A DNA stretch of 64,000 nucleotides from IMGVR_UViG_3300035212_003113:62001-126000, one strand, 5' to 3'. Shown: positions 533 to 61,262, counted from the first letter of the stretch. The notes: generated from the letters alone by a model not told the origin. Made by a program: numbers and translations.

Positions 533-565
533 GGCCGGACCTAAAGACCGGTCGGGCCGATCCTG
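533..565 (+). promoter_or_regulatory. CCTAAA-N13-GATCC hairpin element, copy 1
   Basis: CCTAAA 540-545, GATCC 559-563; arms GGCCGG/CCGGTC; followed by GGAGCGAAG-ATG. Confidence 0.75.
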
Positions 566-576
566 ACGGAGCGAAG

Positions 577-960
577 ATGCAAAAACTAGACGAGGTACTA
601 GACGCCTTGCGGGCAGAACGTGCCGATAACGACCGGCTTATCCGGGCGCTAGACAAGTCAGAGGCATATGCTGCCGACTGTGCACAGCAGTGTGGAGACC
701 TGGCAGAAGGCGTAGCGAAGGCACTAGGTATGGGCTATGTCCTTGTTGTGCCAGATGATGTCCGTATAATTGAGCGGGCAACCACTACTGTGACACAACT
801 GCGTAACGCTACCGCCCTACTCGCAGAGGCGCTAGGTCAACTAGAGACTCACTCCGGCTTTAGTGCTTATAGCAGAATTCATTCTATGGCCGGAGAAAAG
901 CTGGCCGCCCGTATACATTGCTTTCTCGGAGAACTAGATGCGAGCAGAATCAAGGACTGA
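577..960 (+). CDS. hypothetical helical protein
   Basis: ORF with GGAG SD directly after the element. Confidence 0.7.
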   Translation: MQKLDEVLDALRAERADNDRLIRALDKSEAYAADCAQQCGDLAEGVAKALGMGYVLVVPDDVRIIERATTTVTQLRNATALLAEALGQLETHSGFSAYSRIHSMAGEKLAARIHCFLGELDASRIKD

Positions 961-1456
961 GCGCTATCGACGCAAGCTGCCTACGGCAGACCTATTGCCC
1001 GTGGAGGTAACTAGCGTCAACTTCCGCTGCGAAGAGAATATCGCTTACCTCATCCGTGCAGCAGCTTGCTTTGGCGCATCAGCCGTAAATGTAATCGGCT
1101 CCTGTCCTCCTCCCGGATTACTGCGTGAACTTTCGGGCACTACTTCGGACTTAGTTACGATTCGTAATTTTTCCTCGCCTGGAGACTTCCTGCAATTCTG
1201 CCGCGACAACAATAGGAGAATTGTCTGCGCGGAGCTGGCAAATGATGCCACAAGCTTGCATGACTATGCCTTTGACCATAGCGCAATCACCTGTATTGTT
1301 ATTGGTCACGAGCAGCTGGGCGTTCCAGTTGACATCCTGCATCACGGCGACGTAGTGCAGATCCCAATGCCAGGCTTTGGCTACTCGCTTAATGCTGCTC
1401 AGTCCGGTAATATCATGCTTTACGAATATGCGAAACAGTTCGCGCGGAGTTGCTAA
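938..1456 (+). CDS. SpoU/TrmH-family RNA methyltransferase
   Basis: ENIAYLIRAAACFG, VIGHEQLG, IPMPGFGYSLNAAQSG SPOUT motifs. Confidence 0.9.
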   Translation: MRAESRTERYRRKLPTADLLPVEVTSVNFRCEENIAYLIRAAACFGASAVNVIGSCPPPGLLRELSGTTSDLVTIRNFSSPGDFLQFCRDNNRRIVCAELANDATSLHDYAFDHSAITCIVIGHEQLGVPVDILHHGDVVQIPMPGFGYSLNAAQSGNIMLYEYAKQFARSC

Positions 1457-2586
1457 TGGTTGGCTTTCATGAATCTCTCGCTGCAACACAAGCATATCTC
1501 CGCGAAGGAGGTTCGCTAGAAAGGTTTGAGAGCGAGCATGGTATTGCCGGCAAGAGCGACGGACAGCACCTCATTCTGGATTATGACCAGATCACTGTCA
1601 AGTGGACCGAGCCTTATGCCTATGCCTGTCGTGGCCTTGTGCTCGATGCGGTTACGTTTGACGTGATTGCTGCGCCAATCAAAAAGTTTTTCAACGCGGG
1701 CGAGCACTATGCAGATACTATCGACTGGAGTTCTGCCACGGTCTTTGAAAAGATTGATGGCACAATGGTCAACCGTTGGTGGAGTCCGCATACCGAACGT
1801 TTTGAATATAGTACCCGGTTTCAGTTGCCGGCTGGCCTAGAAAGCTCTGCCGTTAATTCCGGCATGATGAAGTGGGGCGATATGATTCGCCGATGCATGG
1901 CATCGCTTGACACGGCGTTTTTAGAGTCTCAGCCAAAGGACGAGACTTGGACTTTCGAGGTATGCTCGCCGCATAATATGGTTGTTGTGCGACATGCTGC
2001 TTTCTTTGCACGACTACTGGCAATCAAAAACATCCGATCTCTAGAAGAGAGGTCCGTTGCCACCAACCATTATGGTCCTAAGAACTATGCCTTTGCTAAT
2101 GCCGATGAAGTGGCTGCATTTGCAAATGCACATCCTGCTACAGAGCTAGAGGGCTTTGTAGTAGTGGACGCTGCTTTTAATCGCATAAAGATTAAGAGCG
2201 ATCAGTACGTTGCCCTCCACCGGGCCAAAGACGGCTTGCGTAGCGCCAATAATATTCTGCTGCTGGCTCGCTCAAATGACTACGAAGAAATCGTAGTACA
2301 TTTTCCTGAATACAAGGAAGACTTAGACGCAGCTACCGCCATTATCGAAGAGCTAGTTTCCAGGCACGAGGCAGCCTTCCAAAGGCACAGAGATGTGTCT
2401 TCTCAAAAAGATTTCGCAATTGCTATTGCCGCTGAGGGACTAGAGTGTACAGCGGCGCTGTTTTCTCTGCGAGCAGGCAAGGTTACCAGCATAGGGGCAG
2501 CTATTGCCGCGATGAATGAAACGGCTTTCTGCAAGTTGCTTAAACCAAGGCTTCTAGAAAAGATCGGCGCCAAGTACGCTGAATAA
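1456..2586 (+). CDS. T4 Rnl1-like RNA ligase
   Basis: CRGLVLD, KKFFN, motif I EKIDG, motif IV EGFVV, motif V IKIKS; TAATG coupling to the TrmH gene. Confidence 0.88.
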   Translation: MVGFHESLAATQAYLREGGSLERFESEHGIAGKSDGQHLILDYDQITVKWTEPYAYACRGLVLDAVTFDVIAAPIKKFFNAGEHYADTIDWSSATVFEKIDGTMVNRWWSPHTERFEYSTRFQLPAGLESSAVNSGMMKWGDMIRRCMASLDTAFLESQPKDETWTFEVCSPHNMVVVRHAAFFARLLAIKNIRSLEERSVATNHYGPKNYAFANADEVAAFANAHPATELEGFVVVDAAFNRIKIKSDQYVALHRAKDGLRSANNILLLARSNDYEEIVVHFPEYKEDLDAATAIIEELVSRHEAAFQRHRDVSSQKDFAIAIAAEGLECTAALFSLRAGKVTSIGAAIAAMNETAFCKLLKPRLLEKIGAKYAE

Positions 2587-2645
2587 GCGCTTCCGGGCGC
2601 CCCATATTCATATGGGCTTAATTCTGAAGTAAGACAGGAGGGACT

Positions 2646-2846
2646 ATGGCCGTAATAATACTTGATATCTCCCCTGCTAGCGTTCAGGTAATTCGAGACG
2701 GTTATATTGCTGAGGAATCAGCAAAGCCGCTGTCTCCCGATGATAGGGCGCTTCCAGCTCTGCAAATAGTAGAGCGGGGGCATGATAAAGCAATTCCTCT
2801 TACAGAAGATCAGATAGCAGAGCTGCATCGCAAATACCGACTATGA
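2646..2846 (+). CDS. hypothetical protein
   Basis: 66-aa ORF with AGGAGGG SD. Confidence 0.6.
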   Translation: MAVIILDISPASVQVIRDGYIAEESAKPLSPDDRALPALQIVERGHDKAIPLTEDQIAELHRKYRL

Positions 2847-2864
2847 ATGCTCTAGGATAGCTCT

Positions 2865-3695
2865 ATGAAAAAGATATTAGATAGCCTTGTCGCGGCAGCT
2901 AATGCCGCTGATACTGCTGGCTTGGAAAAGCTAGCAAATGATATTGATGACCTAACGCTTTCCGTTATAGATGAAACTAAAAAATCTCCCGCTGCCAAGT
3001 TAAGCGAAATCCCTAACTGGGAAATGGGCGGAGGCTATAATAATATTATGGCCCTACTGAAAACAGCCAGCCCAGAAGAAATAGATTACTGGCGCAATTG
3101 GTATGCTAATGCTAGACAAGATGTGCAGGCATTGGCGGTTAAATATAACGAGCCTTTTGACCTAGTAGCAGCAACAGTAGCGGTACTAAGCCCTGGAAAC
3201 AATTGGAAATCTAATTTGCGGGCGGCAGAAAACCTATTGCTAGAGGTTCATGACGGCGGAAAGGGCGCGGTCGGCTCCGGCCCTAAGAAAGATAAATCAT
3301 ACGATACTTCTGACATACACAGGCAAATAGCTGAAGAAGAAGCGCCTGTTAATGTCAGATACCGCAATATTGCCGCTTATCCTGCCAATGCAGAGAAGGC
3401 TCGTAACATATTGATCACCGGAAACGTAGCTGATCATTTGACTGGGCCAAAAGTAACTATATTCTACGACAGCTTGGTACATCCCGAGCACGCTCGCGAT
3501 CATATGGTGCTTGATGGCCATGCCATAAACATTTGGCGCGGCGTTCGTGTTCCACTAAAAGGACTAAAGAGTCCTACTGATGCAGAACGAGCGGCAATGA
3601 TATCAGACTATAAGCGCGCTGCCGCAGATACTGGCCTAAGCGTACAGGAAGTTCAAGCAATTACCTGGTTTCTTTGGAAAACGGCGGAAGAATAA
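2865..3695 (+). CDS. Shared N-terminal leader fused to a phage HhH-glycosylase-like (DUF7178-like) domain
   Basis: WY...VAVLSPGNNWKSN...GPKVTIFY...VLDGHA...QAITW pattern; leader shared with 15052 and 38746. Confidence 0.65.
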   Translation: MKKILDSLVAAANAADTAGLEKLANDIDDLTLSVIDETKKSPAAKLSEIPNWEMGGGYNNIMALLKTASPEEIDYWRNWYANARQDVQALAVKYNEPFDLVAATVAVLSPGNNWKSNLRAAENLLLEVHDGGKGAVGSGPKKDKSYDTSDIHRQIAEEEAPVNVRYRNIAAYPANAEKARNILITGNVADHLTGPKVTIFYDSLVHPEHARDHMVLDGHAINIWRGVRVPLKGLKSPTDAERAAMISDYKRAAADTGLSVQEVQAITWFLWKTAEE

Positions 3696-4073
3696 ATGAG
3701 ATTTCTTATACTGGATGACGATGCCTCTCGACACGAGGGCTTTGACTTCCTACTGCCCGGCCACAAAGTAGTTCATGCTTATAGCTATACCGATTTCGTT
3801 GCGGCTGCTAAATCACAAACATTTGATATTATTTGCCTTGATCATGATCTTGGAATAGAAGTAGATGGCGAGCAAATGATTGACAATGGCCAAGCTAGAG
3901 AACTAACTGGACAAGATGCAGCCCGCTGGCTTGTAGACAATCCTCAGCATTTTCCAGATAGCATTCTTGTGCATTCACACAATCCTGTCGGTGCTGCCGC
4001 CATTGCAGATATTCTGCGAGCGGTGCCCGGCAAGCGCGTAGTTGTCAGGCCCTATTCAGCACCTAGGAAGTAA
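3696..4073 (+). CDS. Cyclic-phosphate-processing receiver-domain protein
   Basis: LILDDD..R, ICLDHDLG, TGQDAARWL, VHSHNPVG. Confidence 0.8.
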   Translation: MRFLILDDDASRHEGFDFLLPGHKVVHAYSYTDFVAAAKSQTFDIICLDHDLGIEVDGEQMIDNGQARELTGQDAARWLVDNPQHFPDSILVHSHNPVGAAAIADILRAVPGKRVVVRPYSAPRK

Positions 4074-4074
4074 C

Positions 4075-4260
4075 ATGAATATCCGCGTTATTGCAGAGAA
4101 AGAGTTGCCTGATGGCTCCATGCAGCTCTCTGTCGAGATGGATGATGAAGCCGAGGCAACTATACTTGGGCTGTACAATGAGCAAGTACTGACCGAAGAA
4201 CTTGTGTCCCGATTTGTAATAGAAGCTATCGAGAACCATGTAGAAAAGAAAGGCAAGTAG
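4075..4260 (+). CDS. hypothetical protein
   Basis: Short acidic ORF packed between neighbours. Confidence 0.55.
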   Translation: MNIRVIAEKELPDGSMQLSVEMDDEAEATILGLYNEQVLTEELVSRFVIEAIENHVEKKGK

Positions 4261-4261
4261 C

Positions 4262-5299: not shown

Positions 5300-5302
5300 C
5301 TT

Positions 5303-5524
5303 ATGACTGAAGAAACACGCGCGCGCATAAAAGCATCCATAATTGACAAAGGCCTTGAAAAAGTAGTTAGTCGCAAGCTACTGGTATGGGCAGTTGCCAC
5401 GGTAGGCGTTCCACTAGGCTTTCTTAGCGGAGCAGAGTGGATGCAGCTTAGCATGGTATATATAGGCAGCCAGGCTGCCATGGACTTCGCTCTTAATTAT
5501 ACAAAGGCTCGCTCAGGGGGCTGA
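5303..5524 (+). CDS. small membrane protein (holin-like)
   Basis: SRKLLVW followed by two hydrophobic segments; YIGSQA. Confidence 0.5.
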   Translation: MTEETRARIKASIIDKGLEKVVSRKLLVWAVATVGVPLGFLSGAEWMQLSMVYIGSQAAMDFALNYTKARSGG

Positions 5525-7315: not shown

Positions 7316-7414
7316 GTGCGCAGGAACTCCGGAAAAGCTTACATTGGCATCTGTTTGACTAGCTACTTGCAAATTATTCATTTGCTGATTGCACAAGAAA
7401 TCGTTAATATTGTA

Positions 7415-7452
7415 GGTCGGGGCGGGCCTAAAGCCGGTGTCGCCCGATCCTG
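7415..7452 (+). promoter_or_regulatory. CCTAAA-N13-GATCC hairpin element, copy 2
   Basis: CCTAAA 7427-7432, GATCC 7446-7450; GGC/GCC inner stem; GGTCGGG can pair with CCCGATC. Confidence 0.8.
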
Positions 7453-7482
7453 AAGGGCGTAACCCGAACCGCCGGAGTAGTC

Positions 7483-7881: not shown

Positions 7882-7883
7882 CC

Positions 7884-8620: not shown

Positions 8621-8622
8621 CC

Positions 8623-9331: not shown

Positions 9332-9375
9332 ATAGAATGATTTGATCTGTCAATCATTGGGCTGCCGGAGAGCAA

Positions 9376-9761: not shown

Positions 9762-9768
9762 GAAGTTG

Positions 9769-9981: not shown

Positions 9982-10012
9982 CCTAAAACCGGCGCAGCCG
10001 GACAAAGCGGAG
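9981..10012 (+). promoter_or_regulatory. degenerate CCTAAA element (copy 3)
   Basis: CCTAAA 9982-9987 + 13 GC-rich nt + GACAA instead of GATCC; followed by CGGAGTAGTT-ATG like other copies. Confidence 0.45.
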
Positions 10013-10017
10013 TAGTT

Positions 10018-10569
10018 ATGCGTGGTCTTTTCGTAATCTTGTCCTTGTTTATATCGACCGCTTCCTTGGCGAGCAAATACATAGAGGATGCCTACCTAGG
10101 TGGCTACTCTGTGCCGTTTATTGGCGAAGTAGTTGACAGCGACAGGAAAGGTGATTTCATCCTAATGGATGATGCCGCTGCTTCTTATATAGAGTTACGA
10201 AAAGCAGCCAAGGCAGCAGGCTTTAATCTAATTCTTAATTCTGCTTATCGCAGTACTGCTGATCAACATAGAATGATGCGACAGCGGCGGCGCTGGGCTG
10301 CGCAGGTAGGCTATAGCATGCATCAAAGCGGAAGAGCAGTTGACATTGCTGGAACCCGCGTGCGCTGTCGAGCTAAGCGTCGGAGACTTTGCAAAAGCGC
10401 ATTATTCGCGTGGTTACAGGAAAATGCACCGGCATACGGCTGGCATAATTCTGCACCAAAGGAACCGTGGCACTGGTTGTTCTCTGGCACAGATACACAA
10501 ACAGCACTAAAAGGCTATGGGCGCGCTTTATGGCGCGGTCCACCGGGACAGCCAAATTGCAGTCGCTAG
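10018..10569 (+). CDS. M15B (VanY-like) D-Ala-D-Ala carboxypeptidase with signal peptide
   Basis: SAYRS, SMHQSGRAVD, WLQENAPAYGW, EPWHW. Confidence 0.88.
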   Translation: MRGLFVILSLFISTASLASKYIEDAYLGGYSVPFIGEVVDSDRKGDFILMDDAAASYIELRKAAKAAGFNLILNSAYRSTADQHRMMRQRRRWAAQVGYSMHQSGRAVDIAGTRVRCRAKRRRLCKSALFAWLQENAPAYGWHNSAPKEPWHWLFSGTDTQTALKGYGRALWRGPPGQPNCSR

Positions 10570-10570
10570 A

Positions 10571-10606
10571 GGCGAACGGCCCTAAACCCGGTCTCGCCCG
10601 ATCCCG
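10571..10606 (+). promoter_or_regulatory. CCTAAA-N13-GATCC hairpin element, copy 4
   Basis: CCTAAA 10581-10586, GATCC 10600-10604. Confidence 0.78.
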
Positions 10607-10638
10607 TGCGGCGTTGGCGCCGCGCCAAAAGGAGAACT

Positions 10639-13421: not shown

Positions 13422-13434
13422 TGTAAAGCCTTAT

Positions 13435-13988: not shown

Positions 13989-13991
13989 AAC

Positions 13992-14468: not shown

Positions 14469-14473
14469 ATAAT

Positions 14474-16954: not shown

Positions 16955-17324
16955 GATAACCGGCATTGCGAGAGAGACGGCAAAGAGCGTTCGGCGATCT
17001 GCTGGCTGGAGCAAAGTAAGAAAAGCGCACCTTGCGGCCAATCCGCGCTGCGCTGCTTGCGGCACAAAACGCCTGCTTCAAGTCCATCATATTAAGCCTT
17101 TTAAAGAGCAGCCCGAGCTAGAACTTGATCCGGCAAATTTAATAACGCTATGCTTACTTAGAGACTGCCATGTTGATATTGGACATGGTGGCCATTATAA
17201 GTTTTACTGTTCCGATGTGCGCGTCATTTGTGCATCTATTGTAGGCGGTCATCTTAGCCTTAAGCAAGGCAAAGAATTGGCCAAAAATATGCGGCGGCTG
17301 AACGATGGCCTGCTCAATACATAG
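16938..17324 (+). CDS. HNH endonuclease
   Basis: W..VRKAHL..NPRCAACG, VHHIKP, NLITLC, CH; start uncertain. Confidence 0.85.
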   Translation: MGITNKITGIARETAKSVRRSAGWSKVRKAHLAANPRCAACGTKRLLQVHHIKPFKEQPELELDPANLITLCLLRDCHVDIGHGGHYKFYCSDVRVICASIVGGHLSLKQGKELAKNMRRLNDGLLNT

Positions 17325-17325
17325 T

Positions 17326-17361
17326 CCCCGCCGGGCCTAAAGCCGGGCTGGGCCGATCCTG
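17326..17361 (+). promoter_or_regulatory. CCTAAA-N13-GATCC hairpin element, copy 5
   Basis: CCTAAA 17336-17341, GATCC 17355-17359; 9 of 11 arm pairs. Confidence 0.8.
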
Positions 17362-17395
17362 AGGCGGGCACCACCCGCACCAGAAAGGACACCCG

Positions 17396-21635: not shown

Positions 21636-21728
21636 AACATCCGCTGATAAGTCACAGATAGCTTTCCTAGATATTTTAGCGGGCAGTCGGCGACAGGTTC
21701 GGCTCCCACCATAAGACATGCAATAGCA

Positions 21729-21766
21729 GGTCGCGGCGGGCCTAAAGCCGGTGTCGGGCGATCCTG
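21729..21766 (+). promoter_or_regulatory. CCTAAA-N13-GATCC hairpin element, copy 6
   Basis: CCTAAA 21741-21746, GATCC 21760-21764; nearly identical to copy 2. Confidence 0.8.
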
Positions 21767-21799
21767 GTGCTCGCCGGAACCCGCATAGGGAGACAGAGA

Positions 21800-26522: not shown

Positions 26523-27716
26523 ATGCGCAAGGCTCTGGCTCTTTTACTCTTGATCGGCTGTTCTGAAGAAATACTAGTAGCGCAGGAAAAGTGCGGGGCG
26601 CCCTGCGCCGTTGTAGATGGCAGCCTACTGCTAAATGATGACGCACTAGAAGCTACTTGTAGGCCCGGCACGTCGGTCTGCGAGGGCGAGAGCGAGGTCA
26701 CCTGTCCTAATTATGTGCCGCCAACCCGAGAAGAGATTTGCGGTAGTTTTCCTGACGATGACTGCAACCCAGCGTCAAAAGAATCTGATATAGAGATTAT
26801 ACCTGGCTGGTACAGCAATACATGCGACAACACTGAGCTAGGCGTGTGTAAAAAATCATACATGATCTGCGTAAACGGCGAACTTGTATGCGACCACAGA
26901 CGCAAGGCCACTGAGGTCTGCGATTACGAACTCGAAGACGAGGATTGCGACGGCCTTGTCAATGAGGAAGATCCTGACATGGTATTTACCATACCGCTCT
27001 TCAGATATGATGGCGACATAAGCACAGCTAATGTTGGTGCCTGCAAAATCGGGGCAGCTCGTTGTATAGCTGGCGTTCAGAGGCACGAGGGCATGGTCCT
27101 GCCTCGAGCCGAAGAATGCGGCAATAATATTGATGACGATTGCGATGGCCTAACTGATGAGCGAGAAGGACAAGCTGATCCTCGGTCTTTCCTACTGCTA
27201 CTAGACTACAGTGGATCAATGTCTGACTACATAAGTAACGTAGAGAGTGCCCTCTGCGACTGGTCAGTAACGCGACCAGATGACTTCTTTGGCATTGGAG
27301 CATTTGGCGCATCCTACAACGGCAATACTTTTGAATACCTAGAGATCGTGCCATTTTCTCCTGCCGCAGATGCGTGCAGAGCAATGAGACGTGCAAATCC
27401 GCCCTCAAGTGGCTCTGAGTACGCTGCGCGAGCCGGTCTGATATTCCTTGAGGATAATCAGTGGCCAACCAGTGACCGGAGTGTTGTTATATTCTCGGAC
27501 GAAGAGCTGCAATACTACTCGACTACGGATGAAGCAAATTTCATAAACATGTGTGCAGAAAGCAGTGTCCAGCTTGGCATATACACGCTTCCTTCAGAAG
27601 AGTGGACGTATGATCCTATTGTAACAGGATGCAACGGCTGGGTAGAGTATCTTGGATCTAGACCTAGTATGATTGCCTCTCTAATTGCGCGCTTTGCCGG
27701 GCGCTGCACGCCATAG
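26523..27716 (+). CDS. lipoprotein with Cys/Asp-rich (MopE-related) repeats and C-terminal vWA domain
   Basis: Lipobox LLIGC; three E.C...D.DC repeats; LLLDYSGSM MIDAS; VVIFSDE. Confidence 0.8.
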   Translation: MRKALALLLLIGCSEEILVAQEKCGAPCAVVDGSLLLNDDALEATCRPGTSVCEGESEVTCPNYVPPTREEICGSFPDDDCNPASKESDIEIIPGWYSNTCDNTELGVCKKSYMICVNGELVCDHRRKATEVCDYELEDEDCDGLVNEEDPDMVFTIPLFRYDGDISTANVGACKIGAARCIAGVQRHEGMVLPRAEECGNNIDDDCDGLTDEREGQADPRSFLLLLDYSGSMSDYISNVESALCDWSVTRPDDFFGIGAFGASYNGNTFEYLEIVPFSPAADACRAMRRANPPSSGSEYAARAGLIFLEDNQWPTSDRSVVIFSDEELQYYSTTDEANFINMCAESSVQLGIYTLPSEEWTYDPIVTGCNGWVEYLGSRPSMIASLIARFAGRCTP

Positions 27717-27718
27717 CA

Positions 27719-27756
27719 GGTCGGGGCGGGCCTAAAGCCCGCTCCGCCCGATCCGG
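27719..27756 (+). promoter_or_regulatory. CCTAAA-N13-GATCC hairpin element, copy 7
   Basis: CCTAAA 27731-27736, GATCC 27750-27754; GCGGGC/GCCCGC stem. Confidence 0.82.
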
Positions 27757-27793
27757 TGGAGCGTCCGGCCCCCGCCGGAGAAAGGAAGTGCCC

Positions 27794-30188: not shown

Positions 30189-30194
30189 TGGTCA

Positions 30195-30232
30195 GGTGGG
30201 GCCGGGCCTAAACCCGGCCCCGCCCGATCCGG
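30195..30232 (+). promoter_or_regulatory. CCTAAA-N13-GATCC hairpin element, copy 8
   Basis: Perfect GGGGCCGGG-CCTAAA-CCCGGCCCC; GATCC 30226-30230. Confidence 0.85.
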
Positions 30233-30253
30233 TGGTGCAGGAACGGAGGTCGC

Positions 30254-33720: not shown

Positions 33721-34206
33721 ATGAGTAATACGATGTTGCGATACATTGAGCAGCGCAGTGCGGCAGAAGCTTTTCGTTGGGGCTTCTCCAGTATGGAGAC
33801 AGAATTGAAAAAAAAGAACAGCTTTTCCGTATTCGATTTTCCACCTGGTAGCGCTGCGGTCGTTGTTATCGAGCAGGATGGACAGCTGCTTGCAGTCAGT
33901 CGCCGCGATAATCACGCAGACCTCGGGCTGCCCGGCGGCAAGATTGAGCCCGGAGAATCGCCAATCACTGCCGCTTGCAGGGAGGCCGTAGAGGAGCTGG
34001 AAGCTACTGTCTGCAACCTAATGCTGGCAAGCATTGCTGCTGTCAATGGTATTGCTGTTTTTATTTACCGGGCAGAGCTAATTGGCGACTTGACGGAGCG
34101 TATCAACAGCGAGGGTGCGCGCGTTTGCTGGACCAGTCCACATACCATTTGCAAGGGCAGTTTTGGTAAATTCAATAAGCAATACGTCCTCCCACTTCTT
34201 GCTTGA
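33721..34206 (+). CDS. Nudix hydrolase
   Basis: PGGKIEPGESPITAACREAVEE Nudix box. Confidence 0.9.
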   Translation: MSNTMLRYIEQRSAAEAFRWGFSSMETELKKKNSFSVFDFPPGSAAVVVIEQDGQLLAVSRRDNHADLGLPGGKIEPGESPITAACREAVEELEATVCNLMLASIAAVNGIAVFIYRAELIGDLTERINSEGARVCWTSPHTICKGSFGKFNKQYVLPLLA

Positions 34207-34208
34207 CA

Positions 34209-34246
34209 GGCCACCCCGGCCCTAAAGCCGGGGTCCGCCGATCCTG
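34209..34246 (+). promoter_or_regulatory. CCTAAA-N13-GATCC hairpin element, copy 9
   Basis: Perfect ACCCCGGC-CCTAAA-GCCGGGGT; GATCC 34240-34244. Confidence 0.85.
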
Positions 34247-34273
34247 AGCGGCGACGCCCACAACGGAGTAAAG

Positions 34274-36860: not shown

Positions 36861-37607
36861 ATGACCTGGAATTCAGACGCAGAAGGCGCAGGGGCACGGA
36901 CATTTCGAAACAGCTTTGTTGCCAGGTTTGATGGCAAAGGCTTCTCTCGTCTTGTTCGGTCTCCTGAATTTGTTGCCCCTTTTGACAATAGCATCTGTCA
37001 AAGCATGCACGCAGCAACCGACTGCATAATCAAGCATCTTACTCCTGACTTTGTGTATCAAGTTTCGGACGAGATAAGTGCTTTTTTTATAGCACGTCCA
37101 GAGGCCGGATCTCAGCTGCCGTTTGGCGGCAAAGAATCCAAGGTATGCAGTATTGGTGCTTCGGCGGCAGGCACCGCATTTTCTCTCGCGCTAGGCAAAT
37201 CCGCGCTGTTTGATGGGCGAGCATTCGACTGCACAGCAGATCAAATGCCTGATTATCTTGCTTCCCGGCTGAAGTCTGGCTTCAAGAATAGTGTTAGTCA
37301 GCTAGCCGGCGAGCACTTTTCTGCCAAGTCTCTGCATTGCAGGAACAGCGCGGAAAAGCTACAGATGCTTGCAGACGCGGGAATAGATTACAATGGCATG
37401 CCCGAAGACTTTAAATATGGGCGAATTTGGTATAAGGAAAAGCAGCAGGTCTGGAGCGATGTTGCAGGCGAGCATATTCAGCGCAGTCGCTGGACCAGTA
37501 CCGCGCTATACTCGCAGCTGAGTCAAGCGGCCTTCTCCGAGTTAAAGCGAACTATATCTGAATTGGATGGGCGGGCCGGGCCTAAAGTCGACCCCGCCCG
37601 ATCCTGA
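36861..37607 (+). CDS. tRNA(His) guanylyltransferase Thg1-like
   Basis: RFDGKGFS, PFD, YQVSDEIS, FGGK..K, FDGR. Confidence 0.9.
   Translation: MTWNSDAEGAGARTFRNSFVARFDGKGFSRLVRSPEFVAPFDNSICQSMHAATDCIIKHLTPDFVYQVSDEISAFFIARPEAGSQLPFGGKESKVCSIGASAAGTAFSLALGKSALFDGRAFDCTADQMPDYLASRLKSGFKNSVSQLAGEHFSAKSLHCRNSAEKLQMLADAGIDYNGMPEDFKYGRIWYKEKQQVWSDVAGEHIQRSRWTSTALYSQLSQAAFSELKRTISELDGRAGPKVDPARS
37569..37606 (+). promoter_or_regulatory. CCTAAA-N13-GATCC hairpin element, copy 10 (overlaps Thg1 3' end)
   Basis: CCTAAA 37581-37586, GATCC 37600-37604; GGGCGGG/CCCGCCC arms. Confidence 0.8.
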
Positions 37608-37691
37608 ACTACGGGCGGCGCGGCCAGCCACCGGGGTTGCACAGTAATTCTGCTTGTGCAGCCAGCAGAGGCCTTGTTTAATAGGAATAAA

Positions 37692-43417: not shown

Positions 43418-44166
43418 AAATGCTTTCACATATCGTTTCCAACTCAGGCATAACCGTTGTCTTTGACGACGGTCCAAAGATGCTGCACAAGAGTTCTGCC
43501 AGATACCAGGAAGCTCTTGATGCCCTTAAAAGCAGTGACATCTCAACGCTTAGAGAGATAATGGATCCGCGAGGAGCCATTAAGAAATACTCTAATAATG
43601 AGCTTAGCTTTGAAGAAGACGGCAGCCTTTCATTTGAAGGGCTGCGCCTTGGCAGCAAGCTAGAGTCGCTTCTCAAGTCATGCATGAGTCGAGGTCTTCC
43701 CTGGGAAGTAATAGCTCGATTCGCTACCAACTGCCTTGCAAATCCATCTACACGGGCACATAGCGAGATCGAGTCGCTGCTAAGTATCGAAAATCTGCCT
43801 ATTACGGAAGATGGATGTTTCTTAGCGTATAAGCTTGCAACAGTGGATGGCCTTGATGCGGATCACGGAATCTTTGATTGCTCGCCAGGCAAAACAGTTG
43901 AGTACCCGAGAAACAAAATCTCTAGGCATTCCAAGAAAGGTCCAGAGCGCGGATTGTCGGCTGGTGGCAAGGCTTATACCAACTCTGGATTTGTTGGCAA
44001 AACACTAGTGGTGAAGATAAATCCTGCTGATGTAATTGGCGTATATATGCATCCGTATAGGGAAGCAGTAGTATGCCGGTTCTCTGTGGTAAAAGAAGGC
44101 GCTCTAGACTTCGCGTCTGATATCGTAGACTCTACCACTTTAGAGCCGCTGCGGCAAGTGAAGTAA
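43414..44166 (+). CDS. rIIB: rIIB-like protein
   Basis: ANPS, LPITEDGCFLAYK, VKINPADVI; follows rIIA. Confidence 0.85.
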   Translation: MKMLSHIVSNSGITVVFDDGPKMLHKSSARYQEALDALKSSDISTLREIMDPRGAIKKYSNNELSFEEDGSLSFEGLRLGSKLESLLKSCMSRGLPWEVIARFATNCLANPSTRAHSEIESLLSIENLPITEDGCFLAYKLATVDGLDADHGIFDCSPGKTVEYPRNKISRHSKKGPERGLSAGGKAYTNSGFVGKTLVVKINPADVIGVYMHPYREAVVCRFSVVKEGALDFASDIVDSTTLEPLRQVK

Positions 44167-44168
44167 CA

Positions 44169-44206
44169 GGAGGCGGCCGGCCTAAAACCGGCCGCCCCCG
44201 ATCCTG
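44169..44206 (+). promoter_or_regulatory. CCTAAA-N13-GATCC hairpin element, copy 11
   Basis: Perfect GGCGGCCGG-CCTAAAA-CCGGCCGCC; GATCC 44200-44204. Confidence 0.85.
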
Positions 44207-44229
44207 CTGGGCACAGCCCGGAGTGACAA

Positions 44230-45182: not shown

Positions 45183-45653
45183 ATGAAGAAATATAACGCA
45201 TTTGCATACTGCACATTTCCTGCTGAAATAGAGAGCGCATTTCCGCGGTTTGGACGTATTCTTAATGACGACTTTACCCGTCCGCATGCCTCTCTTGTCT
45301 ATATACCAGGGCTTAGCGCAAGTGAAGTTGGCAAAGTCGCCGCTGCCGTAGAGATGCTGGCAAAACGTTTGCAGCCATTTCAGATATCATTTGGAGACAC
45401 TAAGTGCTTCGAGTCAAACAGTGATAGCGTTCCATGGTATGTAGAAGTAAAGGGCGAAGGTTTCCTGCGATTGCGGGAGGCGTTGCTTTCCGTCATTGAT
45501 TCGCTCGATGTCGAAATAAATGAGAAATTTGACAGCTTTGTTCCACATGCCACGCTACAATACATGAAGCCAGGCGAGAGTTATGAGGGCAAATCGCCGT
45601 CAGGCGATTGCACCATAAGTGATGTTCACTTTGCCTTCAAAGAAGCAGAGTAG
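45183..45653 (+). CDS. 2H phosphoesterase (2'-5' RNA ligase family)
   Basis: Two HxS/T motifs: PHASL, PHATL. Confidence 0.88.
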   Translation: MKKYNAFAYCTFPAEIESAFPRFGRILNDDFTRPHASLVYIPGLSASEVGKVAAAVEMLAKRLQPFQISFGDTKCFESNSDSVPWYVEVKGEGFLRLREALLSVIDSLDVEINEKFDSFVPHATLQYMKPGESYEGKSPSGDCTISDVHFAFKEAE

Positions 45654-45690
45654 GCGGCGCCGGCCCTAAAGTCGGACCCGCCCGATCCGG
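45653..45690 (+). promoter_or_regulatory. CCTAAA-N13-GATCC hairpin element, copy 12
   Basis: CCTAAA 45665-45670, GATCC 45684-45688. Confidence 0.8.
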
Positions 45691-45756
45691 TAGAGCGGAC
45701 GGGGTGCCCGGCACCGGATCGCAAGTCTTTTTATAGCAACCAGCAACGGAGTAGCC

Positions 45757-53223: not shown

Positions 53224-53460
53224 ATGCACGACTTCTGCCAGCAAATTGCCCCATGTGATATCAAAGCTGGTCAGACCATCTTAATAAAGTGCCCAAGAAT
53301 TAAAGAGATTTTCCGCGGCGACACTGACCAAATGATAGGTACAGTCTCCGCAGTGTTTGACGCTGGTGGCACGGTTGGCGTTCAAGTAGATATTTCCAAT
53401 AGAAATCAATGGTGGCGCTGGATACCCTCAATTGATGGCGGCGAAGCATTTGTCAAGTGA
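53224..53460 (+). CDS. hypothetical protein
   Basis: GAGG SD before MHDFCQ. Confidence 0.5.
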   Translation: MHDFCQQIAPCDIKAGQTILIKCPRIKEIFRGDTDQMIGTVSAVFDAGGTVGVQVDISNRNQWWRWIPSIDGGEAFVK

Positions 53461-53465
53461 CTGCT

Positions 53466-53500
53466 CGCCCCGGCCCTAAAGCCGGTGCCGCCCGATCCTG
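53466..53500 (+). promoter_or_regulatory. CCTAAA-N13-GATCC hairpin element, copy 13
   Basis: CCGGC-CCTAAA-GCCGG; GATCC 53494-53498. Confidence 0.82.
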
Positions 53501-53540
53501 TTGGGCACAAGGCGAACCCACAGCAGAAAGGATTTTGAAG

Positions 53541-58257: not shown

Positions 58258-58649
58258 ACAATCGTATCGCTTATGCGCTAATTAAAGAGATCCCGCTGCC
58301 CAGGCTGCTTGCTGCACTTGAAGGCGCTAGCGAGGCACCTCCGGCTGAGCTTGCAGAGGCAGCAGACAAAGTAAGCAAGCTCATATATGGCTCAGAAGAG
58401 AACGACCAAATGCTGCGAGACATTGCAAAGCTTCTGGTTACGACGCCAGCTCTTACGAGTAGCATAATTATGCGCTCGCCTGCCGTAGAGGGCTTGCTTG
58501 CAAGCCAAGCCGTTTCGCAGGCTATTGAGTTGCTAAAAAATGCAGGATTTGGTGCCCTACACATAGCAGAACAAAAAGCAGAGCACCGTAGTCCGGTGCT
58601 CAGCAAGTTTCTTAAGATTTGCCAGGAAGAGCTATCTGGTCGCTCATGA
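58254..58649 (+). CDS. hypothetical protein
   Basis: ATGA overlap. Confidence 0.6.
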   Translation: MNNRIAYALIKEIPLPRLLAALEGASEAPPAELAEAADKVSKLIYGSEENDQMLRDIAKLLVTTPALTSSIIMRSPAVEGLLASQAVSQAIELLKNAGFGALHIAEQKAEHRSPVLSKFLKICQEELSGRS

Positions 58650-59006
58650 CTCCGGTTCGTCTACTTCTACCGCTTCCTCTATGTGGGCATCAGACTCTTC
58701 TTCTAGATCTGCGTCATCCCCGTCACCGTCGCCTTCATCTGCGTCTAGCATTCCTTTCAGCCTATTTGCAAGCTCCTTTACAGGATCAGTCGCTGGAAGC
58801 TCTGGCATTGGTGGGGCTTTAGTTGCACCGGCAGCAGGATCAGCTGGCAATGGGACTTCTGAGATCGCATCTCCGCCAGCGGCAGGATTCTTTTGATCAG
58901 TCCCCATTTGTTGGACAAGCGAGTCTATTTTGACAGAAGGGTCAACCGCAGGAGCGGCCTCGTCTGCGGTTTTAAAAAGACTAAAATTAAACACGGAATA
59001 CCTCAT
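58644..59006 (-). CDS. acidic Pro/Ala-rich protein
   Basis: MRYSVFNFSLFKTADEAAPAVD...; biased, protein-like composition; fills the gap. Confidence 0.6.
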   Translation of the reverse strand: MRYSVFNFSLFKTADEAAPAVDPSVKIDSLVQQMGTDQKNPAAGGDAISEVPLPADPAAGATKAPPMPELPATDPVKELANRLKGMLDADEGDGDGDDADLEEESDAHIEEAVEVDEPES

Positions 59007-59331
59007 GAGTGAAAACGAAGAACTATCTCTATATTCGTCTGCAAAAGAATTGAGCAAGAAAAAGCTGCTCGATGGGATTATTTCGCAAATCTCCGATCCG
59101 GGATTCGATATCATTAACTTTGCCAGACTCCTAGAGCAGGATGACGGCGGCGACAATGGTCTAAATCCACTGCACTCTGTATTTACACAGTACAATGTGC
59201 AGCAAGCGAAAAAATTCTTAAGAGCAGTAGAACTACTTGATCAGTATTTTGCATCTATTCCAGATGATCCTTTAGATGGATCGCCTGATGGAGCAGAAGA
59301 GATCGTAGCAGAGGTGGCGGATGACGACTGA
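59005..59331 (+). CDS. acidic hypothetical protein
   Basis: MSENEELSLY. Confidence 0.6.
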   Translation: MSENEELSLYSSAKELSKKKLLDGIISQISDPGFDIINFARLLEQDDGGDNGLNPLHSVFTQYNVQQAKKFLRAVELLDQYFASIPDDPLDGSPDGAEEIVAEVADDD

Positions 59332-59701
59332 CGCACTACTGCCAGGCCGCCGGGTGCGGGTTTACCGCAATCTGCACAGTGGCAACTTCTCGGTTCAGTG
59401 CACCAAAAGTGGGCTAGTTGTTGCGCGAGTGTCGCGCATAGTTCTTGCTAATGCCGCATTTGTGGTCAGGCCAGCCGGCCGCGCAAAGGTTCTAGCGCAA
59501 AAGAAAAAGAATGTGCATGCCTTTGTCGTAGGAGAGGTAAGCGCAGAGGCGCTAGCAGGGACAAGGCAGGTAAAATATAACCCATATGCTGCCGGGCATT
59601 TTTGGATCAACAGCCCCGAACAAGAAATCAGCCGTGCCAACCTGGTACTGCTAGTCGACAACAAGATCTTTATCCGAAAGGAAAGTAATGAACAGCAATA
59701 A
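59321..59701 (+). CDS. conserved phage hypothetical protein
   Basis: [25 protein letters not shown]. Confidence 0.75.
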
Positions 59702-59921
59702 TAGCGACAAGGTAAAACTCACAGGCTTGGTTACAAACGTAAACAATTCGATTATCTTTGTAGAGGTGCAGCACGGCGAAAGGCGGCTTAACATTACCGC
59801 ATATCCCGGCGGCAAGCTCCGTAAGAACTCGATCATGATTACGCTAGGTGATACCGTAGATCTAGAAGTCAGTCCTTATGATCTAACCAAGGGTCGCATA
59901 GTTTATCGGCATGCTAAGTGA
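59688..59921 (+). CDS. infA: translation initiation factor IF-1
   Basis: [27 protein letters not shown]. Confidence 0.93.
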
Positions 59922-60133
59922 TAGCAGGTATAGAAGTAGATGCTGCTGTTACCAAAGCAGCAGGCATGCTGGCTGCAGACAAGATAGTCGCAATAATCGG
60001 ACTGCTTTGCAATTCTAGTAAATGCGCAGTTGATACGCTTTCGGTTTATCTTGTCGAGCTACAGGGAGCTGAGCAGCCAGATCACCTAATGATCGGACTA
60101 GTGAAATACTATATATCACAGAGCGGTGGATGA
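59918..60133 (+). CDS. hypothetical protein
   Basis: Coupled ORF. Confidence 0.5.
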
Positions 60134-60981
60134 TGATAAAAAACGAAAACATTAAGCTTGCCGACGAAGTACATACTATATTCCAGGCCATGCGGCCAAC
60201 TTTTATGTACCTTGCTCGCGGCTACCGAATTCCTAATCCAGGTAATTACGTAGACGAGTGGCTAGCACGAGCCTTCTTTATTGCGAAGAAGTTCGACGAT
60301 GGCGAGCTACAGCGCAAGGCTCTTTCTGACGATGGTCTAGCTGAAGCCGATGGAGCAGACTCCGAGATCGACTTCTTAAAGCTTTTCAAGTCCTATCTAA
60401 AGACTTCGTTCCGGAATGATCTCAATCGGGATTATGGCAAGAAGCTTAAGACTGTTGCTATCGAAGACTTAGTAGCCAAGTCTGCTGGTGGCGATACGCA
60501 GCAGGCGCCTGATCGAGCGATTGATGGCGTTACCTTGCAACCGGATATCGGCATAGACTCCGCTACCATCCCCGACTTACTAGAGATCATTTGCTCTGAT
60601 CTAGAAAAGGCAAAAAAAGATGAAGAGTTTGCCGCAGACCGGGTTAATGTCGTATTCTATGATGCGCTGCGAGGCGCCCTAATGAATCTTGGGCAGATCT
60701 GGATGCAAGACCCGGTGGTGCCCAACTTTGTATCTACCGAGAACAAGAATTACTTTGACGCAGATTTTAGAGAAATGCTTACGCCAAGAGTTGCCTTCTA
60801 CATGGCAGAAGCTGCGCTGGCAGAAGACTCGCCGCTGGTTGCCAGCAAGGTTGCAGACATATGCCTGAGCCATGCTGGTATGGCATTGCAGCGGCGCATG
60901 TATAGGTATTTCTTTGACTACCAGGGCGGACTACAGAAACGCATCCCACGCTTTCGCGCTGCCAAAAAGAAGGAAAAATGA
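60130..60981 (+). CDS. putative divergent sigma-factor-like protein
   Basis: FKSYLKTSFRNDLNRDYGKK resembles sigma70 region 2.3-2.4. Confidence 0.45.
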   Translation: MMIKNENIKLADEVHTIFQAMRPTFMYLARGYRIPNPGNYVDEWLARAFFIAKKFDDGELQRKALSDDGLAEADGADSEIDFLKLFKSYLKTSFRNDLNRDYGKKLKTVAIEDLVAKSAGGDTQQAPDRAIDGVTLQPDIGIDSATIPDLLEIICSDLEKAKKDEEFAADRVNVVFYDALRGALMNLGQIWMQDPVVPNFVSTENKNYFDADFREMLTPRVAFYMAEAALAEDSPLVASKVADICLSHAGMALQRRMYRYFFDYQGGLQKRIPRFRAAKKKEK

Positions 60982-61241
60982 AGAACTTCGGGTTATCTGA
61001 AAAAGAGCTAAAGCAGATCGTAGACAATGTTCATCCCGAGGGATGGACGCGAAAGAAGATTCCTGGTAAAAAGAAGGAGGAACTAGAGCCTTCGGCCGAG
61101 CAGCTAGAAGCGGTAAGGATTCATTTGGAGTCTATTTACATGCTAGACAAGCGCAAGGCTTATCTTCAGCAGCTAGTTGACCGATTGAGGCCAGAGGTAG
61201 AAGGTCGAAAAGTGCCATCAGGCAGTGGGCGCCCGGCCTAA
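60978..61241 (+). CDS. hypothetical protein
   Basis: Stop TAA lies inside the element's CCTAAA. Confidence 0.6.
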   Translation: MKNFGLSEKELKQIVDNVHPEGWTRKKIPGKKKEELEPSAEQLEAVRIHLESIYMLDKRKAYLQQLVDRLRPEVEGRKVPSGSGRPA

Positions 61242-61262
61242 AGGCGGGCGGCGCTGATCCTG
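61227..61262 (+). promoter_or_regulatory. CCTAAA-N13-GATCC hairpin element, copy 14
   Basis: CCTAAA 61237-61242, GATCC 61256-61260; CGCCCG/CGGGCG arms; GGAGCGAAG-ATG as in copy 1. Confidence 0.8.

What the first reader, a model, noticed from the sequence alone, without database searches (positions are those of the whole stretch)
533..61262. Dispersed covarying hairpin element CCTAAA-N13-GATCC heading gene modules (13+1 copies)
Seen: CCTAAA starts at 540, 7427, 10581, 17336, 21741, 27731, 30207, 34221, 37581, 44181, 45665, 53475 and 61237, each followed by GATCC exactly 13 nt later. A degenerate copy lies at 9982. All are on +, at gene boundaries, usually 10-50 nt before an SD+start (longer for copies 10 and 12). 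The flanks are GC islands in otherwise roughly balanced DNA. Their sequence changes between copies but arm complementarity is kept: GGGGCCGGG/CCCGGCCCC (copy 8), ACCCCGGC/GCCGGGGT (copy 9, G/C polarity swapped), GGCGGCCGG/CCGGCCGCC (copy 11), GCGGGC/GCCCGC (copy 7). This is compensatory covariation around an invariant loop, plus a fixed-distance second box. A second small hairpin often follows. Known analogies: N4 virion-RNAP hairpin promoters, PeSL mobile promoter/stem-loop cassettes of T4-like phages, lambdoid boxB antitermination hairpins, and integron attC sites. The boxes resemble sigma28 (TAAA...GCCGAT) but are spaced 5 nt shorter. Inference: a phage-specific structured promoter or RNA element that organises, and may help shuffle, the accessory genes.
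Basis: partly seen in the sequence, partly recalled or inferred. Interest (0 to 1): 0.92.

Follow-up and report, generated by a model that had tools for sequence, protein, structure and literature searches.

The report
Phage-specific promoter cassettes with GC stem-loops
The 13 repeats are most likely the promoters of one gene class of an uncultivated 372-kb freshwater phage, built like the known promoter/stem-loop cassettes of T4-type phages but with unfamiliar recognition boxes; the claimed covarying hairpin is not statistically supported.

Summary
CCTAAA-N13-GATCC occurs 13 times in the window, always on +, with 0 expected by chance. All copies are intergenic, and GATCC lies 13-87 nt before an SD-linked start codon.

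The window is part of a 371,675-bp jumbo-phage contig. That contig carries about 73 copies, confined to one 144-kb arc. The true motif is about 30 bp long: CGG-n-CCTAAA-RM-C...YGATCCTG. The spacing is exactly 13 nt in every copy of the family. A pyrimidine-purine step follows 8 nt after GATCC.

About 33 copies outside the window have AT-rich spacers and no hairpin. Many of these sit just after classic intrinsic terminators. The two boxes, not the stem, therefore define the element, and it behaves as a promoter.

All 13 window copies belong to a GC-rich subclass whose arms can fold around CCTAAA. The arms are largely interchangeable between copies, and formal covariation is not significant.

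The architecture runs stop codon, G-rich arm, first box, C-rich arm, second box, SD, start. This matches the PeSL cassettes of T4-type phages, but the boxes are not sigma-70-like. They resemble sigma-28 boxes set 5 bp closer together. The polymerase or factor that reads them was not found.

The parts
522..572 (+). Copy 1, GC-rich subclass (class B). CCTAAA at 540, GATCC at 559-563. ATG at 577, only 13 nt after GATCC.
   Evidence: Fold z = -2.10. It is an outlier: a start about 8 nt after GATCC would cut off the SD.
7409..7459 (+). Copy 2. CCTAAA at 7427. Start codon 32 nt after GATCC. The upstream neighbour is a minus-strand ORF (6320-7396).
   Evidence: Fold z = -0.94.
10563..10613 (+). Copy 3. 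CCTAAA at 10581. SD-linked ATG 34 nt after GATCC.
   Evidence: Fold z = -0.48, a weak stem.
17318..17368 (+). Copy 4. CCTAAA at 17336. ATG at 17396.
   Evidence: Fold z = -0.69.
21723..21773 (+). Copy 5. CCTAAA at 21741. ATG 35 nt after GATCC.
   Evidence: Fold z = -0.18.
27713..27763 (+). Copy 6. CCTAAA at 27731. Start codon 33 nt after GATCC.
   Evidence: Fold z = -2.61.
30189..30239 (+). Copy 7. CCTAAA at 30207. Perfect 12-bp stem. ATG at 30254.
   Evidence: Fold -34.1 kcal/mol, z = -4.49. It is the most stable 44-nt fold in the window.
34203..34253 (+). Copy 8. CCTAAA at 34221. Heads the AAA ATPase gene (34274-35548).
   Evidence: Fold z = -3.55. Its orthologues carry three different perfect stems, one of only 3 of 25 ortholog groups with clear compensation.
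37563..37613 (+). Copy 9. CCTAAA at 37581. Overlaps the last codons of ORF 36861-37607. Long leader (87 nt or more).
   Evidence: Fold z = -2.58. The region just downstream differs from the 76%-identical relative.
44163..44213 (+). Copy 10. CCTAAA at 44181, after the rIIA/rIIB-like genes. Start codon 25 nt after GATCC.
   Evidence: Fold z = -5.10. The stem is compensated in the orthologue.
45647..45697 (+). Copy 11. CCTAAA at 45665. 68-nt leader.
   Evidence: Fold z = -1.39.
53457..53507 (+). Copy 12. CCTAAA at 53475, after the topoisomerase II genes. ATG 36 nt after GATCC.
   Evidence: Fold z = -1.59.
61219..61269 (+). Copy 13. CCTAAA at 61237. ATG at 61282. It is the last copy of the genome's series.
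   Evidence: Fold z = -2.07. No further copy in the next 31 kb or so.
9982..10005 (+). It has CCTAAAACCGG but no upstream CGG and no GATCC box. Not counted as a member; possibly a decayed cassette.
   Evidence: Not recovered with up to 3 mismatches.

Best explanation
The element is the promoter of one transcription class of an uncultivated 372-kb freshwater jumbo phage. A single rigid reader recognises double-stranded DNA through an upstream block (CCGG-n-CCTAAA-RM-C) and a downstream block (YGATCC, usually followed by TG), always exactly 13 nt apart. I infer that transcription starts about 8 nt after GATCC, at a conserved pyrimidine-purine step. This gives a short C/A-rich leader with GGAG and the start codon.

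The 13 window copies belong to a GC-rich subclass. In it a G-rich stretch starts right after the upstream stop codon, and a C-rich promoter spacer can pair with it so that CCTAAA sits in the loop. By analogy with the PeSL cassettes of T4-type phages, this stem most likely forms in RNA that reads through from upstream. It would attenuate or insulate that transcription, or protect the 3' end. The promoter itself does not need it.

Shown: the motif, its rigidity, its placement, its hairpin-free subclass and its restriction to one genome arc.
For: 1. 13 of 13 copies are exact, all on +, with 0 expected.
2. The contig holds about 73 copies between positions 350.8 kb and 123.2 kb (wrapping). All but one are on +. 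None occurs in about 48 kb before or about 31 kb after that arc.
3. The extended consensus includes C+8 in 49/49 copies, C-4 in 48/49, G+25 in 49/49, and C+31/R+32.
4. The spacing is N13 in 66/66 hits in this contig's pieces and in 254/254 hits in the relatives' loci, which partly overlap. No hit has N8-12 or N14-19.
5. About 33 class A copies have AT-rich spacers and no stem, occur every 400 bp or so, and each heads a small gene. At least 11 of 33 lie within 110 nt of a perfect GC stem plus T-run terminator. L019 has 19 terminator-like sites against 8.5 expected. A gene that follows a terminator needs a promoter, and this motif is the only conserved element there.
6. The median distance from GATCC to the SD-linked start is 39 nt.
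7. Sigma-70-like sites are not enriched in the window (24 against 23.5 expected).
8. In six orthologous pairs at about 76% nucleotide identity, CCTAAA is identical in all six and the GATC core in all six (one orthologue reads GATCT), while the arms diverge.
9. All 13 window copies fold with CCUAAA in the apical loop. All z-scores are negative and 7 are at or below -2.
10. PeSLs have the same layout: upstream stop codon, promoter boxes, a polyG/polyC stem between or over the boxes, SD and start, with tested terminator/attenuator activity (PMC2839356).
Against: There is no transcript 5'-end data. The reader of the motif was not found: Pfam scans of 127 ORFs of the arc gave no sigma region 2, RNA polymerase, MotA or AsiA, and roughly 145 kb of the genome was not seen. 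The box centres are about 4-5 bp closer than in any sigma-70-family promoter, so recognition by a standard sigma2/sigma4 arrangement is geometrically doubtful. In copy 1 the ATG lies only 13 nt after GATCC, so the predicted start would remove the SD. The stems lack a U-tract, so terminator activity is only an analogy. Selection on pairing as such is weak. Arm swaps give -13.7 against -12.2 kcal/mol (p = 0.001) within the genome, but there is no effect among orthologues (p = 0.47).
Confidence: 0.72

Rival explanations
1. It is an RNA element in polycistronic mRNA: a hairpin with a conserved loop plus a single-stranded GAUCC box, bound by a phage protein for processing, antitermination or translational control.
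For: In all 13 window copies CCUAAA falls in an apical loop and the folds beat shuffles on average. Three ortholog groups show compensated stems. Arm-swap p is about 0.001-0.003.
Against: About 33 copies in the same genome have no stem. Many lie just after intrinsic terminators, so they would rarely be transcribed from upstream. The linear spacing is invariant although stem lengths vary. There is no significant covariation, no effect among orthologues, and no Rfam match.
Confidence: 0.08
2. It is the binding site of a phage DNA-binding regulator (operator or activator site), or an origin or partition repeat, rather than the polymerase recognition site itself. One candidate binder is the CsgD/LuxR-type HTH protein encoded at L007:7770-8345.
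For: In relatives the upstream block is an inverted repeat, ACCGG-N8-CCGGT. A sigma-region-4/LuxR-like HTH protein is encoded in the arc. Tandem and convergent copies occur in a gene-poor stretch (L011 2600-4700).
Against: In class A the right half-site is absent while the motif is kept. The second box and the conserved start-like step are not palindromic. One copy heads each transcription unit, on the coding strand, at promoter distance. No other candidate promoter is conserved between terminator and gene.
Confidence: 0.08
3. The copies are promoters for the host's flagellar sigma factor (sigma-28/FliA), borrowed by the phage.
For: CCTAAAG matches 6 of 7 positions of TCTAAAG. CCGAT matches the core of GCCGATAA. 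The spacer is GC-rich, as in the P. aeruginosa fliC promoter (PMC12784957).
Against: The boxes are 10 nt apart instead of 15, about half a helical turn, with no exception among 66 + 254 hits. The last two bases of the second box are CC, not AA. The extended motif shows no clustering in any of 185,579 reference genomes (20 single hits in unrelated taxa).
Confidence: 0.05
4. The copies are the ends or recombination sites of mobile gene cassettes (attC-like or miniature-element-like). Their regulatory look would then be secondary.
For: Two clean indels of about 2 kb are bounded by motif copies, and the alignment overlaps across the motif (L006 9049 against L093; L011 9039/11040 against L071).
Against: Alignment breakpoints near motifs (12 of 89) are no more frequent than the share of gene junctions that carry a motif (11%). 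The window is collinear with its 76%-identical relative over 28 kb. No integrase or transposase family appeared in the Pfam lists. The conserved part is the loop and the second box, not the arms.
Confidence: 0.04

Closest known systems
PeSL (promoter-early stem-loop) cassettes of T4-type phages RB49/phi1, PST and nt-1 (PMC2839356, PMC4122927)
   Same: [quoted passage not shown] Both have two promoter boxes plus a stable stem of G-runs followed by C-runs placed between or over the boxes. Both have many copies, concentrated in regions of small ORFans. Indels are bounded by two copies.
   Different: The boxes are not sigma-70 consensus. The stem encloses the first box instead of lying between the boxes. 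The spacing is absolutely fixed. A hairpin-free subclass with separate canonical terminators coexists in the same genome. The phage has no close cultivated relative (at most 37% amino-acid identity). Terminator activity and mini-circles are untested here.
Sigma-28 (FliA) promoters, TCTAAAG-N14-GCCGATAA
   Same: The core letters of both boxes match (CTAAAG; CCGAT). The spacer is GC-rich. The A of GAT would sit at -11 if transcription starts 8 nt after GATCC.
   Different: The boxes are 5 bp closer together. The second box ends in CC(TG), not AA. There is an extra conserved CGG upstream and a conserved C at +8.
T4 middle promoters (MotA box centred at -30, about 12 bp before the -10 element); established knowledge and the review PMC2988021, listed but not read
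   Same: The geometry is similar. If the start is 8 nt after GATCC, the first box is centred near -28 and the gap to the second box is 13 bp.
   Different: Neither box matches in sequence (TGCTTtA; TAnnnT). No MotA or AsiA family was found among the 127 scanned ORFs.
N4 virion RNA polymerase hairpin promoters (established knowledge: 5-7 bp stem, 3-nt loop, extruded from supercoiled DNA)
   Same: A conserved sequence is displayed in the loop of a GC-rich hairpin upstream of phage genes.
   Different: The loop here is 6-8 nt. A second box is needed 13 nt away. About 33 copies have no hairpin at all.

Membership tests
PeSL cassettes (T4-type phages) | Intergenic cassette spanning upstream stop codon to SD/start of the next gene | tested here: met
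   The stop codon is typically at -17..-15 (T-17, CAG at -14..-12). The window copies start 11-18 nt after the upstream stop. The SD-linked start lies a median 39 nt after GATCC.
PeSL cassettes (T4-type phages) | Contains a sigma-70-consensus early promoter | tested here: not met
   The boxes are CCTAAA and GATCC, 13 nt apart. Sigma-70-like sites in window 1-20000 number 24 against 23.5 expected.
PeSL cassettes (T4-type phages) | Stable polyG/polyC stem-loop between or overlapping the promoter boxes | tested here: met
   All 13 window copies fold, with z from -0.2 to -5.1 and 7 at or below -2. The 5' arm is G-rich and the spacer C-rich. The stem encloses the first box.
PeSL cassettes (T4-type phages) | The stem-loop terminates or attenuates upstream transcription; the promoter is active | not testable with these tools
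   This needs reporter or transcript data. The stems lack a T-run: 2 of 40 class B copies have a stem plus T-run upstream, against 11 of 33 class A copies.
PeSL cassettes (T4-type phages) | Recombination between copies produces indels or replacements of the flanked ORFs | tested here: inconclusive
   There are two clean module indels bounded by copies. Breakpoints are not enriched at motif-bearing junctions (12/89 against an 11% baseline).
Sigma-28 (FliA) promoter | -35 element TCTAAAG and -10 element GCCGATAA | tested here: inconclusive
   CCTAAAG matches 6 of 7 positions. (C)CCGATCC matches 5 of 8.
Sigma-28 (FliA) promoter | About 15 nt between TAAAG and CCGAT (elements at -36..-30 and -15..-8) | tested here: not met
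   The gap is 10 nt in every copy. The CCTAAA-GATCC spacing is N13 without exception.
Structured RNA family (Rfam-type, defined by covarying helices) | Base pairs supported by covariation beyond column composition | tested here: not met
   62.7% of cells pair against 61.5 +/- 1.4 in shuffles (105/500). The covariation score is 0.144 against 0.133 (110/500). A +1 slide gives 60.3%. Ortholog arm swap gives p = 0.47.
Structured RNA family (Rfam-type, defined by covarying helices) | Match to a described family | tested here: not met
   There are no Rfam hits at the copies at the gathering threshold or at E up to 0.5.
N4-type hairpin promoter | The hairpin is obligatory for recognition (short stem, 3-nt loop) | tested here: not met
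   The loops are 6-8 nt. About 33 copies with identical boxes have no stem.
Integron attC site | Imperfect inverted repeats that fold as the recombination substrate, next to an integrase, with conserved arms and a variable centre | tested here: not met
   The pattern is the reverse: the loop and second box are conserved and the arms vary. No integrase family appeared in the Pfam lists for 127 ORFs.
T4 middle (MotA-dependent) promoter | MotA box TGCTTtA at -30 plus a sigma-70 -10 element; motA and asiA genes present | tested here: not met
   There is no sequence match, and no MotA or AsiA family in the scanned ORFs. Only the spacing geometry resembles it.

The most novel reading that the evidence does not exclude
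The motif is read by a so far unidentified phage-directed transcription apparatus. This could be a factor or polymerase delivered with the virion or made early. It would recognise sigma-28-like boxes at a spacing about 5 bp shorter than any sigma-70-family promoter allows. In the GC-rich subclass, the first box would be embedded in a stem that doubles as an attenuator for upstream transcripts. That would be a new promoter architecture governing a 144-kb arc of accessory genes in a whole family of freshwater jumbo phages.
Probability: 0.3. Interest if true: 0.7.

Novelty: new variant of a known kind. Interest (0 to 1): 0.5.

Why it matters
If the promoter reading is right, one short motif annotates the transcription units of about 40% of the genome of an uncultivated jumbo-phage family seen in many lake metagenomes. 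It also separates two subclasses that are probably timed or tuned differently. The combination of sigma-28-like letters, a compressed and completely rigid spacing, and no obvious sigma or polymerase gene nearby points to a recognition factor worth finding. It extends the PeSL idea of self-contained promoter/stem-loop cassettes flanking ORFans beyond sigma-70 promoters and beyond classical T4-like phages. It does not open a new category: phage-specific promoters and composite promoter/stem-loop cassettes are both known.

Tried and rejected
1. Fixed-register covariation tests, both my own and the tool's, were not significant.
2. The second hairpin around GATCC showed no copy-specific pairing.
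3. Arm swaps within ortholog groups showed no overall compensation.
4. Rfam gave nothing at the copies, at the gathering threshold or at permissive E-values.
5. A scan of 185,579 reference genomes for the extended motif gave only scattered single hits, so there is no host clue.
6. A literature search for the motif string found nothing relevant.
7. Pfam on 127 ORFs of the arc found no sigma region 2, polymerase, MotA or AsiA. phmmer with E. coli FliA found nothing.
8. The only sigma-region-4-like hit is a 143-aa CsgD/LuxR-type HTH protein with no significant similarity to FliA or to solved sigma factors.
9. A 2,378-aa protein next to the arc is collagen/tail-fibre-like, not a virion polymerase.
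10. Two large proteins beside the tubulin gene lack a D-x-D-G-D motif and have no family hits.
11. Nine contig-walking look-ups (one found nothing) covered contig positions of about 123-154 kb and 301-350 kb. They found structural, replication and chaperone genes but no polymerase. About 145 kb remains unseen.
12. GATC and CCGG are not avoided elsewhere in the window, so there is no hint of methylation logic.
13. Breakpoints are not enriched at motifs beyond the gene-junction baseline.

Full report
**Observation.** CCTAAA-N13-GATCC occurs 13 times in the window, at exactly the stated coordinates and always on the + strand, with none expected in shuffles. With an extended 15-base pattern and up to three mismatches, the same 13 sites score 0-1 mismatch. 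Only one other site appears, inside a gene, at chance level. The population is sharply bimodal. The copies are GC islands (61-77% GC in a roughly 49% GC background). They supply 10 of the 30 most stable 44-nt folds in the window. They start 11-18 nt after the upstream stop codon in most cases. GATCC lies 13-87 nt before an SD-linked start codon.

**Where the window comes from.** The window is positions 62,001-126,000 of IMG/VR contig 3300035212_003113 (371,675 bp). The same genome was assembled independently as a 371,689-bp contig with a different start point. Its genes include rIIA-like and topoisomerase II subunits, two RNA ligases and other RNA-repair genes, an FtsK-like ATPase and many ORFans. 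No cultivated phage is close: megablast finds nothing, and the best protein identities are 31-37%.

**Genome-wide picture.** Pattern scans of IMG/VR and direct inspection give about 73 copies in this contig. They run from position 350.8 kb through the contig end to 123.2 kb. All are on + except one. None, even with one mismatch, occurs in the roughly 48 kb before this arc, which holds baseplate, tubulin, UvsW, DnaB, RNR and a giant fibre-like gene. None occurs in the roughly 31 kb after it, which holds helicase, ligase, Lon, GroEL and then minus-strand tail-fibre-like genes.

In the first 49 copies compiled, C-4 is present in 48, G-2 in 47, C+8 in 49 and G+25 in 49. C+17, Y+18 and T+24 are strongly preferred. 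A C+31/purine+32 step lies 8 nt after GATCC. The spacing is N13 in 66 of 66 hits in this contig's pieces and in 254 of 254 hits in the relatives' loci, which partly overlap. No hit has any other spacing from N8 to N19.

**Two subclasses.**
- Class A has about 33 copies, packed every 400 bp or so between 350.8 and 363.7 kb. Its spacer is AT-rich (consensus GGTCCTAAAAACA...TTTTGATCCTGTTAGAC) and it has no stem around CCTAAA. Each copy heads a small gene. Many lie 20-40 nt after a classic intrinsic terminator. At least 11 of 33 have a perfect GC stem plus T-run within 110 nt upstream, and L019 has 19 terminator-like sites against 8.5 expected.
- Class B has 40 copies, including all 13 in the window. 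Its spacer is GC-rich and a G-rich stretch lies upstream.

The hairpin-free class shows that the two boxes define the element. Its position directly after terminators means a promoter must lie there, and nothing else is conserved between terminator and gene. Sigma-70-like sites are not enriched in the window (24 against 23.5 expected).

**The hairpin.** All 13 window copies fold with CCUAAA in the apical loop. Their z-scores against dinucleotide shuffles are all negative, and 7 are at or below -2. Hairpin potential is therefore real. The evidence for selection on pairing is weak.
- The inner stem is the palindrome CCGG on both sides. It is conserved as sequence and is retained upstream in class A, where it has no partner.
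- In a fixed register, no outer pair covaries.
- The pair-counting tool gives 62.7% paired cells against 61.5 +/- 1.4 in shuffles (105 of 500 reach it). The covariation score is 0.144 against 0.133 (110 of 500). Sliding the 3' arm by one column still pairs 60.3%.
- Swapping arms between class B copies, with bulges allowed, changes the mean energy only from -13.7 to -12.2 kcal/mol (p about 0.001). On average about 40% of foreign arms pair better with a given copy's 5' arm than its own 3' arm does.
- Among 25 ortholog groups from related phages, matched and swapped arms do not differ (-15.5 against -14.9, p = 0.47). Only three groups, including window copies 34221 and 44181, show clearly compensated stems.
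- The second hairpin around GATCC has no copy-specific complementarity.

The stem is thus mostly a property of the class B consensus (G-rich arm, C-rich spacer), not of copy-by-copy compensation.

**Relatives.** One metagenome scan found many lake contigs with multiple copies, for example a 52-kb and a 152-kb contig, and one 9.6-kb contig with 21 copies. There the early-type consensus is ACCGGGCCTAAAGCCGGT...CGATCC. TG after GATCC is not conserved in these relatives, but TAGRC a few bases later is common. A 36-kb relative is collinear with window 33,907-62,335 at about 76% identity. In its six orthologous copies the CCTAAA box and the GATC core are identical (one reads GATCT), while the arms have diverged. 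A scan of one genome for each of 185,579 bacterial and archaeal species gave only 20 single hits in unrelated taxa. The extended motif is therefore not a recurrent host signal.

**Mechanism.** The rigid linear spacing, despite stems of different length, argues for recognition of double-stranded DNA by one rigid protein or complex. So do the existence of an unstructured subclass, the position after terminators, and the conserved pyrimidine-purine step 8 nt after GATCC. If the A of GATCC corresponds to position -11, the start falls at +31/+32. CCTAAAG then lies at about -31 to -25 and the conserved CGG at -35 to -33 (inference).

The letters resemble sigma-28 promoters (TCTAAAG at -36..-30, GCCGATAA at -15..-8; PMC12784957). 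However, the boxes are 5 bp closer, which is about half a helical turn, without exception. A standard host sigma-28 holoenzyme is therefore unlikely. The geometry is closer to T4 middle promoters, where an activator box is centred near -30, but neither sequence matches.

I could not find the reader of the motif.

**Comparison with known systems.** The closest known system is the PeSL cassette of T4-type phages. It is a composite motif that starts at the upstream stop codon and carries -35 and -10 boxes and a polyG/polyC stem between or over the boxes. It ends with the SD and start codon. It is concentrated among ORFans, has tested promoter and terminator/attenuator activity, and recombines to give indels and mini-circles (PMC2839356, PMC4122927).

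The class B copies share this layout. They differ in having non-sigma-70 boxes, a stem that encloses the first box, and absolutely fixed spacing.

Evidence for shuffling is mixed. Two indels of about 2 kb are bounded by motif copies, with the alignment overlapping across the motif. Against this, alignment breakpoints fall near motifs in 12 of 89 clusters, no more often than the 11% of gene junctions that carry a motif.

**Verdict.** The repeat is real and strongly non-random. It is best read as the promoter of one gene class of a new jumbo-phage lineage. In the window it takes the form of PeSL-like promoter/stem-loop cassettes. The 'covarying hairpin' and 'RNA element' readings are not supported. 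It is a new variant of a known kind. Interest is moderate and rests mainly on the unusual box geometry and the unidentified recognition factor.

Noticed in passing
L011 2600-4700 (contig about 361.6-363.7 kb): This gene-poor stretch holds 13 motif copies, including a tandem array at 4294, 4364, 4433, 4514, 4573 and 4632 (59-81 nt apart). It also holds a convergent pair, + at 2722 facing the only minus-strand copy at 2822-2845. Relatives keep a similar array (L055, L101) and a convergent pair about 100 nt apart. It could make short or antisense RNAs, or serve as a transcription-primed origin. There are no Rfam or tRNA hits.
   Followed up: partly
L019 3012, 3582, 4073 and 5053: Four class A copies are followed by nearly identical 60-nt leaders containing a GAGACAGGG...CCCTGTCTG hairpin just before the start codon. 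This suggests tandem duplication of promoter-plus-gene units, or a shared 5'-UTR regulatory structure.
   Followed up: no
L007:7770-8345 (contig about 22.5-23.1 kb): This is a small CsgD/LuxR-type HTH protein with a Sigma70_r4 hit (27.4 bits). It is called as 143 aa in the source and is conserved only within this phage family. It is a candidate regulator of the motif's CCGG...CCGG block, but shows no significant similarity to FliA.
   Followed up: partly
window 1450-2586 and 4262-5299, with other ORFs of the window and arc: There is a dense RNA-repair and tRNA-related gene set: Rnl1-like and Rnl2-like RNA ligases, Thg1, a 2'-5' RNA ligase family protein, a cyclic-phosphate-processing receiver domain, a SpoU methylase and a HAD 'Swiss army knife' RNA-repair domain, plus five tRNA genes upstream of the window (L006, L007, L009). 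This is consistent with defence against host anticodon nucleases.
   Followed up: no
window 31346-32743; window about 59688-59921; L131 10558-16792; L134 1587-1976: The phage carries proteostasis and translation-related genes: a protein with a trigger-factor N-terminal domain, an IF1/eIF-1a-like protein, Lon protease, peptide deformylase, GroEL and GroES.
   Followed up: no
L136 8122-9468 (contig about 318 kb): A tubulin-family protein (Pfam Tubulin; weak PhuZ PHROG hit, E = 3e-6) lies next to UvsW-like and DnaB-like helicases. PhuZ-type tubulins are typical of nucleus-forming jumbo phages, which carry their own RNA polymerases. No such polymerase was seen in the parts examined.
   Followed up: partly
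L134 1-12700 (contig about 328-341 kb): This block has no motif copies. Sigma-70-like sites number 26 against 14.2 +/- 3.9 expected, and an extended -10-like TGTATAAT lies after the RNR genes. The genome may use at least two promoter types.
   Followed up: partly
window 6320-7396, 39547-40239, 48673-49179 and 58644-59195 (minus strand): A few sizeable minus-strand ORFs interrupt an otherwise all-plus gene array. One, a 116-aa version at 58644-58994, is also called in the public gene tables. The 358-aa ORF lies just upstream of copy 2.
   Followed up: no
L132 11431-18567 (contig about 341.6-348.7 kb): A 2,378-aa protein with collagen-like and tail-fibre-like repeats lies immediately before the motif arc. 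A 458-aa minus-strand gene separates the two.
   Followed up: partly
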